IMG/VR virus record: IMGVR_UViG_3300037294_000266
Location: 62,001-126,000 of that record
Length of the DNA: 64,000 nucleotides
Strand: one strand, 5' to 3'
Part shown: one piece after another, positions 11,243 through 57,910 of the stretch
How positions within the stretch are numbered: position 1 is the stretch's first letter
Layout of the letters: every line of letters starts with the position of its first letter
Notes under the pieces: generated by a model
What the model was told of the DNA's origin: nothing
Seen by the model: only the letters and a program-made list of their open reading frames with translations
Database searches by the model: none
Translations under genes and position numbers: made by a program

Positions 11243-11539
11243 TCAGACAGCAATTGGAGCAGAGATAGCAGCGTCGTGGACGTAATCAACCAGTTCGAAG
11301 TCATCAATGGTGAAACCGAAAATATCCTTAACATCAGGATTGATCTTCATCGTTGGCAGTGCATGCGGTGTACGGGTCAGTTGCAGATCAACCTGTTCCA
11401 CGTGGTTGCTGTAAATGTGGATGTCGCCACCCGTCCAGATGAACTCGCCAGGAACCATGTTAGTAGCCTGAGCCACCATCATGACCAGTAATGCGTAGCT
11501 GGCGATGTTAAACGGAACTCCCAAGAAGACGTCACAACT
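11243..11539 (-). CDS. thyA: Thymidylate synthase exon 2
   Basis: [18 protein letters not shown]...GDIHIYSNH...ISAPIAV. Confidence 0.95.
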
Positions 11540-12625
11540 CATTATATTCAGTTAGGTTCGTTAATCCTAACCCGCCTCTCAGTAGCAGGCAGCTGCATGT
11601 CGCCATGCAGAGTAGACTATATCACACTCCACTTCCATGTGGAGTCCTCCCATTTCGAGTCCACTTGGACCCTACAATACTCGGTTCGCCATTATCATCA
11701 ATGTGGCGCCTTTCTTTAGTCGTTGGGCCTTACCGTAGTCCGTATCCACTGTATTTTGGGTTCTTGCTTTTGATCCTGTAATGGATCGTAGGAACTGGAA
11801 TTCCTAACTGCCGGCCTGCCTCGGCCAGCGAAGGATAGACAACGCCATCTATAACCACACTGAGTGTGTTTGGCGGTATATTTCCTTTACGGGCTTCTGA
11901 CAACTTTGCGCGAGTTTCGAGGGTGTGACTACGGCCAAAGAACGGGTTACTTTCACCAGTCCTTGCAGATGCTATTTCAGAAAGTCGTTTTCGAGTCTCT
12001 TCTGATCTAACACTACCTGTAGCGTAACTGTTTCCTCGTTGAATATCGGATAAACGAGCAATGACTTCAGCAGTATGACTGCGCCCAAACATTCCGTTTG
12101 ATTCGCCTTGCCTTCCGTACACCTGTACTCGTTCTTCTTCCGTCATTCTTTCCAGCCGTAATCTAAGAGAATCACCTATCCGAGAAATTATATCTTCTCG
12201 ATCAGGATGTCTCGTTAGATTATCGCCACCGATAGCCTGCGTACCGATATTGAGGCACTTCTTATTAAAAGTACCGCGACGGATTAAATGATCTTCGCAC
12301 TTGTAAGCTTCTTCCCTAGAATCGTACTCTTGGATAGATGCTCGCATTTCATGGCCAGCGTCAAATAGCTGCTGAAGTAACTGGTTATGATGAGTCCCAT
12401 TATAGAGCTCTCGCTCATGCCGGTCTAATCGCTTGTCCAGTTCACCAGTGCTACCGACGTAGTAACTTCCAGTATTCAAATCAGTGATTACGTATGTGTA
12501 GTACATTGTCGTCTCCTTTGGATAGGAAACGGACTACGGCTTTAGCAACGGATTGTCTCTTAGAGAGTTCCCCGTTTTAGAGAGGTTTTCAAGATAGCTT
12601 ACGCTATCAGGGCGCAGTTTGATTT
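11540..12625 (-). mobile_element. Group I self-splicing intron (1086 nt) in thyA
   Basis: 5' exon ends in U with P1 GCGUA/UGCGC including the U.G pair. P-like AAAACGGGGAAC, Q-like AAUCCGUUGCU, R-like CCCAACGACUAAA, S-like GAUAUAGUCU, terminal G. Splicing restores LYQR|SCDVFLG. Confidence 0.93.
11730..12506 (-). CDS. Intron-encoded GIY-YIG homing endonuclease (I-TevI-like)
   Basis: YTYVI...YYVGST...R...H catalytic domain, three NUMOD3-like HT/S-x-E-T-R-x-K-L-S repeats and a C-terminal HTH. Flanked by the P6a arms GCCGTAGTCCGT / ACGGACTACGGT. Confidence 0.93.
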   Translation of the reverse strand: MYYTYVITDLNTGSYYVGSTGELDKRLDRHERELYNGTHHNQLLQQLFDAGHEMRASIQEYDSREEAYKCEDHLIRRGTFNKKCLNIGTQAIGGDNLTRHPDREDIISRIGDSLRLRLERMTEEERVQVYGRQGESNGMFGRSHTAEVIARLSDIQRGNSYATGSVRSEETRKRLSEIASARTGESNPFFGRSHTLETRAKLSEARKGNIPPNTLSVVIDGVVYPSLAEAGRQLGIPVPTIHYRIKSKNPKYSGYGLR

Positions 12626-13726
12626 ACGCTGGTAGAGCTGACAATAGAGACGCCGTTCTGGAACACCCAGTTCATTCAAGACCAGTGTTGCATTGACAAT
12701 TCCGCCCTGAGGGTCTTCACCTACTACGAAGCCTTTCTTCTTAGCAAGTTCTTGACGTTCTTCAAACGACAACGGAGCCGTGTAGAACTGGAACAGGCAG
12801 TGACATGGCGGTAAAGCCATCTGATCCACTTCAGCAGGGTTCCAGGCACTGACGATCAACCGCCGGCTGTCTGGGTTGTTCTTGAGCTGATTGATCAAGT
12901 TGGCGATCTGATCAATGGCCGGATTGATAACTTTAGCCACCCGCCGTTCTTTTGGAACGCCAAGACGATCGAAGGTTTCCGATAGGTTCTTCAACGCCTC
13001 GTTGCGCTCAGGACCGCTTGGTTTGACATACGCCTTACCAAGGAGTTCGAAGTAATCGTCGTGCTGATTGGCTTCGACACAGCGTTCGTAGATCGACAGG
13101 TTTTCACCCAACTTCACCATCTGAGGGTTTGGCCAAGAGCGCCACTGACTACCGTAGACAGGACCGAGTTCACCAGCGATCAGTTTCTTAGTTTCGATGC
13201 CGTAGAACTCAGCAATGTGCTTGTACGCATATGCCTGAGCCTGGGGTTCAGTCTCGTGATTGTCGAAGGCTTCTTTCTTACAGCGATTGTAGAAGTCCTC
13301 AGTCACAAGGAACAGTACGGCAGGATTGCTCTCAGGCCCTAGCATCTCAAATGAGATGTCGACTGGTTGATCGGCATGTTCGATTCCAGCCAGCCGGTCG
13401 GCTTTGAAGCGCTTTTTGATGCCGGTATGAAGTTCGGAAATGGTCAGATCTTGCCATTCTTCCGTACCTTCTTTGATCCACTCGTCCCAGATGGAGACGC
13501 CGTTTTCCTTCAGGTAACGGATGTTGGTCTCACCTTTAAGGAACCACAGGAGTTCGTGGATGATGGACTTCAGGTGGGTCTTCTTGGTCGTAACCAATGG
13601 AAATCCGTCAGACAGATCAAAACGCATCTGGTGACCGAAGATGGAGTACGTCCCTGTCCCGGTTCGGTCTTGCTTATACCTGCCGGTTTCACGGATGATG
13701 CGGAGGAGATCAAGATACTGTTTCAT
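12626..13726 (-). CDS. thyA: Thymidylate synthase exon 1
   Basis: DRTGTGT, FPLVTTKK, ELLWFL, LGPVYGSQWRSW, DSRRLIVSAWNP, LPPCH, LYQR. Spliced product is 465 aa. Confidence 0.95.
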
Positions 13727-54797: not shown

Positions 54798-54885
54798 TGG
54801 CGGAAGCGGTGAGATTCGAACTCACGGACCCCGAAGAGTCGACAGTTTTCAAGACTGTAGGATTCAACCGCTCTCCCACGCTTCC
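54798..54885 (-). tRNA. trnS: tRNA-Ser(UGA)
   Basis: Complete type II cloverleaf GGAAGCG...ACAGTCT-TGA-AAACTGT...long variable arm...GTTCGAATC...CGCTTCC-G-CCA. Confidence 0.97.
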
Positions 54886-54890
54886 AATAC

Positions 54891-54963
54891 AGGTGCTGAT
54901 ACCGGGAATCGAACCCGAGTCCTCCGTCACCAACAGGTGCGCCTTCTCTGCGCCACTATCTAC
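54891..54963 (-). ncRNA. Degenerate tRNA-like element (intact T-arm, weak anticodon arm, ACCT end)
   Basis: D-stem GCGC/GCGC, T-arm TCGGG-TTCGATT-CCCGG, acceptor 6/7 bp. Confidence 0.6.
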
Positions 54964-57828: not shown

Positions 57829-57910
57829 CACCTCTAGCGAGTCTCGAAGTCGCACACCGTCGATTAGAATGGCTACCAATCGACTGTCCTACCAATTGGA
57901 CGATAGAGGT
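57829..57910 (-). ncRNA. tRNA-like RNA with 7-bp anticodon stem and 12-nt loop
   Basis: Perfect acceptor ACCTCTA/TAGAGGT, D-arm GTCC-AATTGGTA-GGAC, GTCGATT/AATCGAC, T-loop TTCGAGA. No encoded CCA. Confidence 0.75.

What the first reader, a model, noticed from the sequence alone, without database searches (positions are those of the whole stretch)
11540..12625. Group I intron in thyA at QR|SCD, 21 nt upstream of the T4 td insertion site
The T4 td intron sits at FLG|LPFN. This one has a similar architecture (GIY-YIG ORF looped out of P6a) but interrupts the gene seven codons earlier, close to where I-TevI cuts. This suggests independent invasion and different homing-site geometry. In nucleus-forming phages such endonucleases can also act in phage-phage interference (precedent: PhiPA3 gp210), which is inference here.
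Basis: partly seen in the sequence, partly recalled or inferred. Interest (0 to 1): 0.6.

Follow-up and report, generated by a model that had tools for sequence, protein, structure and literature searches.

The report
Mobile group I intron in thyA
The thymidylate synthase gene of this large, probably nucleus-forming phage is interrupted by a self-splicing group I intron that carries a homing endonuclease gene; the intron is real and well preserved, but it sits at an insertion site already known from Bacillus and visible in published jumbo-phage genomes, so it is an ordinary new member of a known kind.

Summary
Confirmed. On the minus strand, thyA is split after ...TAC CAG CGT (exon 1, 13726-12626) and resumes at AGT TGT GAC (exon 2, 11539-11243). 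The two exons match E. coli thymidylate synthase up to residue 166 and from residue 167.

The 1086 nt between them (12625-11540) is a T4-td-like (IA2) group I intron:
- It has a U.G 5' splice site, a terminal G, and P1/P10 pairings that covary with the exons.
- The P3-P9.2 core is supported by compensatory changes.
- A 258-aa GIY-YIG/NUMOD3/I-TevI-type endonuclease ORF is looped out of a 12-bp P6a stem.

The window scores below Rfam's threshold only because the ORF splits the model. A natural ORF-less twin, with 3 differences in 293 ribozyme nt, scores 63.2 bits against a cut-off of 50.

The site is 21 nt upstream of the T4 td site, as claimed, but it is not new. SPbeta-like Bacillus phage, phiKZ-like Pseudomonas phages, Erwinia RisingSun and Dickeya JA29 all use it, and it fits the published I-BmoI target numbering.

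Relatives carry intronless, ORF-less, other-ORF and endonuclease-bearing alleles, which is the usual pattern for a mobile intron. Splicing, cleavage and any role in phage-phage interference remain untested, because no RNA data exist.

Verdict: new member of a known kind, modest interest.

The parts
12626..13726 (-). thyA exon 1 (367 codons, ends ...LYQR). It has three insertions relative to E. coli TS.
   Evidence: Pfam PF00303 profile 1-169, E 8e-65. PDB alignments to E. coli TS residues 1-86, 88-105 and 109-156.
11540..12625 (-). Group I intron, 1086 nt, td-like subgroup IA2. It starts after the U of CGU and ends in G.
   Evidence: The ORF-less twin L106:3536-3835 scores 63.2 bits for Rfam Intron_gpI.
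12612..12619 (-). Internal guide sequence. GCGC (12615-12612) pairs with exon 1 GCGU to form P1, with U.G at the splice site. AACU (12619-12616) pairs with exon 2 AGUU to form P10.
   Evidence: Read. Covariation with the exons in RisingSun (CACU/AGUG), JA29 (UUGA/UCAA), SPbetaL1 (GCGG with exon CCCGU) and L105 (CACU/AGUG).
12594..12609 (-). P2 hairpin GAUAGC-GUAA-GCUAUC.
   Evidence: Sequence. Recovered in the MFE fold of the ORF-less twin.
12545..12585 (-). 5' strands and hairpins of the core: P3 5' (12585-12580), P4 (12576-12571 with 12552-12547), P5 (12566-12563 with 12559-12556), P6 5' (12546-12545).
   Evidence: Pair table across 12 td-like cores. P3 is canonical in nearly all sequences, with several pair types per position.
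12529..12540 (-). P6a 5' strand (GCCGUAGUCCGU).
   Evidence: It pairs with 11743-11732 over 12 bp. In the ORF-less relatives the hairpin is closed by 7 nt between 12532 and 11738.
11730..12506 (-). Homing endonuclease gene, 258 aa: GIY-YIG, three NUMOD3 and an I-TevI-type DNA-binding domain. GGAG lies 6 nt upstream of the ATG. The 3' end of the ORF overlaps the P6a 3' strand.
   Evidence: Pfam. PDB I-TevI 1i3j E 1e-9 and 1mk0 E 2e-3. Catalytic Y, Y, R, H, E and N align with I-TevI Y6, Y17, R27, H31, E75 and N90. dN/dS is 0.16 against the L099 copy.
11732..11743 (-). P6a 3' strand (ACGGACUACGGU).
   Evidence: Complement of 12540-12529.
11540..11729 (-). 3' half of the ribozyme: P6 3' (11728-11727), P7 (11721-11717 with 11619-11615), P7.1 (11708-11704 with 11691-11687), P7.2 (11672-11667 with 11662-11657), P3 3' (11651-11646), P8 (11645-11639 with 11632-11626), P9 (11610-11604 with 11599-11593), P9.1 (11592-11587 with 11577-11572), P9.2 (11571-11566 with 11556-11551), terminal G at 11540.
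   Evidence: RNAalifold on 9 relatives predicts P7, P7.2, P8, P9 and P9.2, with 18 of 31 pairs compensatory. Shuffle and slide controls. Own pair table.
11243..11539 (-). thyA exon 2 (98 codons plus stop, [11 protein letters not shown]...).
   Evidence: Pfam profile 169-266. PDB E. coli TS residues 167-264.

Best explanation
This is a self-splicing group I intron of the T4-td family (subgroup IA2), inserted in thyA between the codons for the active-site residues R166 and S167 (E. coli numbering).

Splicing, inferred. After transcription the RNA folds into the P1-P9.2 core. The internal guide pairs first with the end of exon 1 (GCGU, with U.G at the splice site) and then with the start of exon 2 (AGUU). 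Guanosine-initiated transesterification joins ...UACCAGCGU to AGUUGUGAC..., restoring an intact thymidylate synthase message.

Mobility, inferred. The loop of P6a holds a separate module, a 258-aa GIY-YIG homing endonuclease of the I-BmoI/I-TevI type. By analogy with those two enzymes, its C-terminal NUMOD3 and helix-turn-helix part binds the conserved TS coding sequence downstream of the insertion site. Its catalytic domain makes a staggered cut in the CNNNG motif (CAGCG here), 2 to 4 nt upstream of the insertion site, in intronless alleles. Repair from the intron-bearing copy then spreads the intron and the nearby exon sequence. The phage's own allele is protected because the intron replaces the critical upstream bases.

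What is shown: the gene split, the ribozyme homology and covariation, the ORF domains and catalytic residues, and the allele series in relatives.

What is inferred: splicing itself, the cleavage position, and mobility.
For: Gene split
- thyA is split exactly at R166|S167.

Ribozyme structure
- Both halves of the ribozyme are homologous to the T4 td intron and to 10 other phage td-like introns.
- An independent RNAalifold run finds P7, P7.2, P8, P9 and P9.2, with 18 of 31 pairs compensatory.
- 92.3% of cells are paired against 79.3% in shuffles (0 of 500), and against 30-43% when the partners are slid.
- P3 pairs the two halves across the ORF, with CG, UA, AU and GC variants.
- P1 and P10 covary with the exon sequence in five same-site introns.

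Rfam scores
- The ORF-less twin L106 differs at 3 of 293 ribozyme positions. All three changes are structure-neutral: G.U to A-U, and two loop bases.
- L106 scores 63.2 bits for Rfam Intron_gpI against a cut-off of 50.
- L105, another ORF-less intron at the same site, scores 70.9 bits.

Conservation against relative L099
- The ribozyme is 92-94% identical. The HEG is 82% and the exons 65-79%.

The endonuclease
- The domains and catalytic residues are intact.
- HEG dN/dS is 0.16, and its dS of 0.70 is below the exon dS of about 1.6.

Allele series in relatives
- Intronless alleles: L107/P0122, P0123, P0124, ChrisDB, SPAsTU, SNUABM_9.
- ORF-less alleles: L105, L106, and runs X2 and X5.
- An allele with a different ORF: L100.
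- HEG-bearing alleles: L099, L103, L104, run X8.

Homing site
- CNNNG and G-2 are present in this exon 1 (CAGCG|U) and in the closest intronless allele (CAAAG|A).
- This matches the published I-BmoI and I-TevI requirements.
Against: - There is no RNA evidence. No RNA run holds this sequence, and the one run labelled RNA was judged probably DNA and showed no exon-exon joint.
- The window itself reaches only 21.4 and 16.8 bits for Rfam Intron_gpI, and nothing at the gathering score.
- P1 is short, at 4-5 bp.
- The endonuclease has not been assayed. Its cleavage position is taken from I-BmoI and I-TevI by homology (28-39% identity).
- In T4, efficient td splicing depends on ribosomes translating exon 1. 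In a nucleus-forming phage, transcription and translation are separated, so splicing efficiency here cannot be assumed.
Confidence: 0.9

Rival explanations
1. The intron is a decayed relic that no longer splices, so thyA is a pseudogene and the phage relies on host thymidylate synthase.
For: No RNA data. The Rfam score on the window itself is below threshold.
Against: All core helices are intact. The ribozyme is 99% identical to an ORF-less twin and 92-94% identical to a relative whose exons are only 65-79% identical. The three differences from the twin are structure-neutral. Both exons keep full-length, uninterrupted TS frames with exon 2 dN/dS of 0.06.
Confidence: 0.05
2. There is no splicing. 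thyA is a genuinely split gene with a free-standing endonuclease gene between the halves, and the two polypeptides reassemble.
For: Depositors annotate the homologous loci as separate CDSs, for example RisingSun gp186/187/188 and JA29_025/026/027.
Against: The split lies inside the active site, between R166 and S167. The non-coding flanks of the ORF are the most conserved part of the locus and fold into a group I core with covariation. ORF-less versions of about 300 nt exist at the same site and pass Rfam.
Confidence: 0.02
3. Beyond selfish homing, the endonuclease acts as a weapon. During co-infection it enters a shared or foreign phage nucleus and cuts the intronless thyA of a competing chimallivirus, lowering that competitor's yield, as PhiPA3 gp210 does to PhiKZ. 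This would add to the best explanation rather than replace it.
For: The genome encodes a chimallin homologue, so it is probably nucleus-forming. Close relatives with intronless alleles and an intact CNNNG site exist. The gp210 precedent is experimental.
Against: gp210 is an HNH nicking enzyme in an essential virion RNA polymerase gene. thyA is a metabolic gene that the host enzyme may replace. A double-strand break here is more likely to be repaired by homing. Nothing is known about import of this protein. Frequent loss of the ORF in relatives (L105, L106) argues against strong benefit to the phage.
Confidence: 0.12

Closest known systems
Bacillus thyA/thy introns at the R|S site: the B. mojavensis thyA intron encoding I-BmoI and the phage beta22 thy intron, represented here by Bacillus phage SPbetaL1 (L003)
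   Same: The insertion site is the same, after the Arg codon CGU and before Ser. The SPbetaL1 exon context fits the published I-BmoI numbering: G-2, A+4/A+5, A+8/C+9. The intron is td-like. The endonuclease is of the same type, GIY-YIG plus NUMOD3 repeats plus a helix-turn-helix, with no zinc finger. The expected cut is 2-4 nt upstream of the insertion site.
   Different: The host is a probable chimallivirus from a salt-lake metagenome rather than a Firmicute or its phage. The ORF sits in P6a here and in P8 in SPbetaL1. Protein identity is only 39%. That beta22 and I-BmoI sit 21 bp from the td site rests on my memory of Bechhofer 1994 and Edgell & Shub 2001, which were not held.
T4 td intron with I-TevI
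   Same: Same gene and same intron family. Blocks of the core are near-identical, P7.1/P7.2 are present, P9 has a GNRA loop, and the 3' end reads CUGAAYAUAAUG. The ORF is likewise in P6a with its 3' end running into the core. The endonuclease is homologous (28% identity; PDB 1i3j and 1mk0).
   Different: The td intron sits 21 nt further downstream, at FLG|LPFN. I-TevI has a zinc-finger linker and cuts 23/25 nt from its own insertion site (distance from memory). Here the homologous cut position is 2-4 nt from the insertion site.
Unremarked thyA introns in published jumbo phages: Pseudomonas phiKZ-like SL2, T2P, OMKO1 and PA02; Erwinia RisingSun and Joad; Dickeya JA29
   Same: Same R|S site, the same td-like core, and related GIY-YIG endonucleases at 40-49% identity. 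RisingSun and JA29 also carry the ORF in P6a.
   Different: SL2-type introns carry the ORF in P9.1. Exon and intron sequences are only about 70-76% identical to the window. The depositors annotate these loci as separate CDSs, not as introns. I found no paper describing them.
PhiPA3 gp210 intron endonuclease (interference competition)
   Same: [quoted passage not shown]
   Different: gp210 is an HNH nicking enzyme in a virion RNA polymerase gene. Its import and its fitness effect were shown by experiment. None of this has been tested here.

Membership tests
Group I intron (Rfam RF00028), td-like subgroup IA2 | The 5' splice site follows a U that forms a U.G pair with the internal guide (P1), and the intron ends in G. 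| tested here: met
   Exon 1 ...GCGU pairs with GCGC at 12615-12612, and the last base is G at 11540. P1 position -4 covaries in SPbetaL1, and P10 covaries in RisingSun, JA29, SPbetaL1 and L105.
Group I intron (Rfam RF00028), td-like subgroup IA2 | A conserved catalytic core (P3-P4-P6 and P7-P8-P9) supported by covariation. | tested here: met
   Pair tables on 12 cores. RNAalifold gives 18 of 31 compensatory pairs. 92.3% of cells are paired against 79.3% in shuffles, 0 of 500.
Group I intron (Rfam RF00028), td-like subgroup IA2 | The covariance model reaches Rfam's gathering score (50 bits) on the window itself. | tested here: not met
   21.4 and 16.8 bits for the two halves, and none at the gathering score. 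The 777-nt ORF in P6a splits the model.
Group I intron (Rfam RF00028), td-like subgroup IA2 | The covariance model reaches the gathering score on the same ribozyme without the ORF. | tested here: met
   The natural ORF-less twin L106:3536-3835, with 3 differences in 293 nt, scores 63.2 bits. L105 at the same site scores 70.9 bits.
Group I intron (Rfam RF00028), td-like subgroup IA2 | The peripheral P7.1/P7.2 helices typical of subgroup IA. | tested here: met
   P7.1 is 11708-11704 with 11691-11687. P7.2 is 11672-11667 with 11662-11657 and covaries.
Group I intron (Rfam RF00028), td-like subgroup IA2 | Guanosine-dependent self-splicing that gives ligated exons. | not testable with these tools
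   No RNA run holds the sequence, and contigs showed no exon-exon joint.
GIY-YIG homing endonuclease of the I-TevI/I-BmoI type | An N-terminal GIY-YIG domain with the catalytic Tyr, Tyr, Arg, His, Glu and Asn. | tested here: met
   PF01541 E 6.6e-11. I-TevI catalytic domain 1mk0. The residues align with I-TevI Y6, Y17, R27, H31, E75 and N90.
GIY-YIG homing endonuclease of the I-TevI/I-BmoI type | A modular C-terminal DNA-binding region (NUMOD3 repeats and a helix-turn-helix). | tested here: met
   NUMOD3 in three stretches and PF20987 I-TevI_DNA-bd. 1i3j E 1.2e-9 over residues 180-248.
GIY-YIG homing endonuclease of the I-TevI/I-BmoI type | A zinc finger in the linker (specific to I-TevI). | tested here: not met
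   The Cys-rich segment of I-TevI has no counterpart. As in the SPbetaL1 (I-BmoI-like) protein, an extra NUMOD3 repeat takes its place.
GIY-YIG homing endonuclease of the I-TevI/I-BmoI type | The target carries the CNNNG cleavage motif, with G at -2 relative to this insertion site. | tested here: met
   CAGCG|U in the window's exon 1, CAAAG|A in the closest intronless allele L107, and CAGCG|U in ChrisDB, SPAsTU and SNUABM_9.
GIY-YIG homing endonuclease of the I-TevI/I-BmoI type | Site-specific double-strand cleavage of the intronless allele. | not testable with these tools
   This needs the purified protein and a substrate such as L107.
Mobile (homing) intron | Sporadic distribution among related genomes, and a history that differs from that of the host gene. 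| tested here: met
   Intronless, ORF-less, other-ORF and HEG-bearing alleles occur among relatives. The ribozyme is 99% identical to L106 while exon 2 is 85%, proximal exon 1 is 94.5%, and distal exon 1 is barely alignable. HEG dS of 0.70 is below exon dS of about 1.6. This evidence is indirect.
Interference-competition endonuclease (PhiPA3 gp210 type) | An HNH nicking endonuclease in an essential virion RNA polymerase gene. | tested here: not met
   This is a GIY-YIG enzyme in thyA. gp210 is described.
Interference-competition endonuclease (PhiPA3 gp210 type) | Import into the phage nucleus and a lower yield for the co-infecting competitor. | not testable with these tools
   Only a chimallin homologue in the genome could be shown.

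The most novel reading that the evidence does not exclude
A td-family intron is maintained, almost unchanged, in a phage that separates transcription (inside a protein-shelled nucleus) from translation. In T4, splicing of this intron family is helped by ribosomes translating exon 1.

If so, this intron must either splice without ribosomes inside the phage nucleus or splice after export. Its endonuclease would have to be re-imported to find DNA. That could make it subject to the import selectivity that decides whether it only homes or also damages co-infecting relatives.

The natural series of intronless, ORF-less and endonuclease-bearing alleles found here would make this testable.
Probability: 0.15. 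Interest if true: 0.6.

Novelty: new member of a known kind. Interest (0 to 1): 0.3.

Why it matters
For annotation, thyA in this genome and in many deposited jumbo-phage genomes should be one spliced gene, not two TS fragments plus a stray endonuclease.

For biology, the locus adds a clean natural allele series. It contains an intronless site, an ORF-less intron that is 99% identical in its ribozyme, an intron with a different ORF, and endonuclease-bearing introns at 82-92% identity. This series illustrates the gain-and-loss cycle of homing endonucleases. It also extends the I-BmoI-type thyA site from Bacillus to Gram-negative jumbo phages.

If the host phage can be cultured, it would also be a handle on how group I splicing and endonuclease import work in nucleus-forming phages. 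None of this overturns current understanding.

Tried and rejected
- Near-identity search of the whole locus in the phage collection found nothing.
- Rfam at the gathering score on the window gave only tRNAs. At the E-value threshold it gave sub-threshold Intron_gpI hits, plus chance hits to SNORD25 and bxd_5 that I disregard.
- 80 IMG/VR thyA loci fetched with exon 1 were all uninterrupted at this site and too distant to help.
- The reads tools gave DNA contigs only. They held no RNA and no spliced joint, so splicing is untested. Some loose ends near 11527-11533 are uninterrupted thyA of other organisms and not alleles of this phage.
- Edgell & Shub 2001, Bechhofer 1994 and Liu 2006 are not held. 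The '21 bp' statement for I-BmoI and beta22 is therefore from memory, supported here by the SPbetaL1 sequence and by the nucleotide numbering.
I redid the work with coordinates only.
Exons were searched separately by reference. ORF-less cores of ORF-bearing introns were assembled only inside scripts, from coordinates, for pair counting.
- An nhmmer profile of the 3' half found no second td-like intron in the 266,646-bp genome.
- Intein, group II intron and assembly artefact were considered and dropped. The exons abut exactly, the core is group I, and independent contigs from other samples show the same arrangement.
Full report
**Observation**

The finding lies on the minus strand. ORF listing and direct reading show a thymidylate synthase frame from 13726 that runs through ...CTC TAC CAG CGT (ending at 12626). 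It continues for 8 codons to a TAA. A second frame, ATG AGT TGT GAC..., runs from 11542 to 11243.

Pfam Thymidylat_synt matches profile positions 1-169 on the first piece and 169-266 on the second. Against solved structures, exon 2 taken from 11539 aligns end to end with E. coli TS residues 167-264. Exon 1 aligns with residues 1-156 and onward.

T4 td, read from the T4 record, ends its exon 1 at ...YQRSVDVFLG|. This break is therefore 7 codons, or 21 nt, upstream of the td site.

They were searched one by one, by reference.

**What the insert is**

The ORF. The central ORF (12506-11730, 258 aa) has a GIY-YIG domain, three NUMOD3 motifs and the I-TevI DNA-binding domain. It matches the I-TevI DNA-binding domain (1i3j, E 1e-9) and catalytic domain (1mk0).

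Resemblance to T4 td. The non-coding flanks resemble the T4 td intron block by block.

The helices, read from the sequence:
- Internal guide: AACU-GCGC at 12619-12612. GCGC pairs with exon 1 GCGU (U.G at the splice site), and AACU pairs with exon 2 AGUU (P10).
- P2: a GNRA-capped hairpin.
- P3: CCUCUC with GGGAGG, spanning the ORF.
- P4, P5 and a 2-bp P6.
- P6a: a perfect 12-bp stem (12540-12529 with 11743-11732) that encloses the ORF.
- P7: GACUA with UAGUC.
- P7.1, P7.2 and P8.
- P9: with a GCGA loop.
- P9.1 and P9.2.
- A terminal G at 11540.

**Tests of the fold**

Alignment and pair counts:
- I aligned 12 td-like cores, cut by coordinates. They came from thyA of this window, RisingSun, JA29, SL2, SPbetaL1, T4 and Klebsiella EI, plus introns in other genes of phiKZ, LC, JSE, 4HA13 and a Nitrincola phage.
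- P3, P7.2, P8, P9, P9.1 and P9.2 keep pairing through many double changes.
- RNAalifold on nine contiguous 3' halves independently predicted P7, P7.2, P8, P9 and P9.2, with 18 of 31 pairs compensatory.
- Counting pairs on that alignment gave 92.3% paired cells against 79.3% in shuffles (0 of 500). Sliding the partners gave 30-43%.

Splice-site pairings. P1 and P10 track the exons:
- RisingSun has CACU with AGUG.
- JA29 has UUGA with UCAA.
- SPbetaL1 has GCGG with exon CCCGU.
- L105 has CACU with AGUG.

Rfam scores:
- On the window, Intron_gpI gives only 21.4 and 16.8 bits for the two halves, because the ORF splits the model.
- A natural ORF-less twin settles this. L106 is a 27,964-nt Logan contig of the same length as the ORF-less contig seen when laying run X5.
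- It has a 300-nt intron at the same site whose ribozyme differs from the window's at 3 of 293 positions.
- The three differences are a G.U to A-U change in P6a and two loop bases.
- L106 scores 63.2 bits against a cut-off of 50.
- A second ORF-less intron at the same site (L105) scores 70.9 bits.

**Is the site new?**

No. The same R|S site is occupied in four published groups:
- Bacillus phage SPbetaL1
- phiKZ-like Pseudomonas phages (SL2 and at least ten others)
- Erwinia phages RisingSun and Joad
- Dickeya phage JA29

The SPbetaL1 exon context (CGT|AGTAATGAT) fits the nucleotide numbering used in the I-BmoI papers: G-2, A+4/A+5, A+8/C+9.

Those papers state that I-BmoI and I-TevI are isocaudomers that nick the same positions of homologous TS sequence. 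They also state that I-BmoI needs the G-C pair at -2, next to the top-strand nick. The published geometry is therefore the one proposed here: the cut falls 2-4 nt from this insertion site.

That beta22 and I-BmoI lie 21 bp from the td site is from my memory of papers that are not held.

This window's endonuclease is closer to the same-site enzymes than to I-TevI:

| Compared with | Protein identity |
|---|---|
| SL2 | 49% |
| JA29 | 43% |
| RisingSun | 40% |
| SPbetaL1 | 39% |
| I-TevI | 28% |

It lacks I-TevI's zinc finger. The ORF position varies among same-site introns: P6a here and in RisingSun and JA29, P8 in SPbetaL1, and P9.1 in SL2. This suggests that related ORFs entered related introns more than once.

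**Evidence for activity and mobility (indirect)**

The 99-aa exon 2 ORF has about twenty database relatives of exactly 99 aa, on contigs of up to 267 kb. Their contexts show four kinds of allele:
- Endonuclease-bearing introns: L099, the 236-kb contig, L103, L104, a 20.9-kb contig, and run X8 at about 92% identity.
- An intron with an unrelated 160-aa ORF: L100.
- ORF-less introns: L105 and L106.
- Intronless alleles. The closest exon 1 relatives (P0122 at 66%, P0123 and P0124) are full-length, uninterrupted proteins of 456-464 aa. The P0122 site reads ...CAAAGA|TCAGCG..., which keeps CNNNG and G-2.

Identity to relative L099, by region:

| Region | Identity to L099 |
|---|---|
| Ribozyme | 92-94% |
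| Endonuclease gene | 82% |
| Exon 2 | 79% |
| Exon 1 tail | 65% |

The endonuclease has dN/dS of 0.16 and dS of 0.70, against about 1.6 for the exons.

Identity to ORF-less twin L106, by region:

| Region | Identity to L106 |
|---|---|
| Ribozyme | 99% |
| Proximal 291 nt of exon 1 | 94.5% |
| Exon 2 | 85% |
| Middle of exon 1 | barely alignable |

This mosaic is what homing with co-conversion, or recombination around a mobile element, would leave.

The more distant L099 carries the same ORF at the same place, while the near-identical L106 lacks it. Recent loss of the ORF in L106 is therefore more likely than recent gain here. That is an inference.

**Context**

The window is part of a 266,646-bp IMG/VR virus record from a salt-lake metagenome. 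The genome encodes a full-length homologue of phiKZ chimallin gp54 (E 2.4e-26), so it is probably nucleus-forming. It holds only this one td-like intron.

The PhiPA3 gp210 precedent for interference is real. It concerns an HNH nicking enzyme in an RNA polymerase gene whose import was shown by experiment. Nothing here bears on import or on harm to competitors.

I found no paper describing thyA introns in chimalliviruses. Depositors list the pieces as separate genes.

**Verdict**

The observation and the structural interpretation are correct. The element is a well-preserved, probably active, mobile td-family group I intron with an I-BmoI-like endonuclease, at a known thyA insertion site. It is a new member of a known kind. 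Splicing, cleavage and interference remain to be tested.

Noticed in passing
window 12626-13726 (minus): ThyA exon 1 is 367 aa against about 166 in E. coli TS. It has three insertions, of roughly 98 aa (after residue 86), 68 aa (after residue 105) and 40 aa (after residue 156). Relatives differ greatly in these segments; exon 1 ORFs range from 294 to 477 aa.
   Followed up: partly
P0170 (relative found with exon 1): A 625-aa ThyA relative carries Hint/intein and LAGLIDADG Pfam domains. In some relatives, thyA is therefore invaded by an intein rather than an intron.
   Followed up: no
L100:3331-3813: A relative has, at the same thyA site and in a related intron, a 160-aa ORF with no Pfam hit in place of the GIY-YIG gene. 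The P4-P6 part of its intron is of the phiKZ/LC type, while P1-P3 and the 3' half resemble the window, so the intron looks mosaic.
   Followed up: partly
window 57829-57910 (minus): Rfam calls a tRNA here (41.5 bits) with 11 extra nucleotides in the anticodon-loop region. ARAGORN does not call it.
   Followed up: no
window 54798-54963 (minus): Adjacent tRNA-Ser(tga) and tRNA-Thr(ggt) by ARAGORN. Rfam at the gathering score lists only the first.
   Followed up: no
G000:C1:50086-50289 (outside the window): A second, short GIY-YIG-like frame (30-35% identity to the N-terminal 55-70 residues of the intron endonucleases). It may be a free-standing or decayed endonuclease.
   Followed up: no
G000:C1:153359-155155 (outside the window): A 649-aa homologue of phiKZ gp54 (chimallin), 25% identity over the whole length, which marks the genome as a probable nucleus-forming phage.
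   Followed up: partly
L091 (Pseudomonas phage LC) 1650-1899 and 3061-3382; L096 (phiKZ) about 1640-1885: phiKZ-like phages carry several further td-like group I introns that are unannotated in the records. Two in LC pass Rfam at 88.9 and 79.1 bits. The phiKZ one lies between gp71 and gp73, with gp72 inside it.
   Followed up: partly
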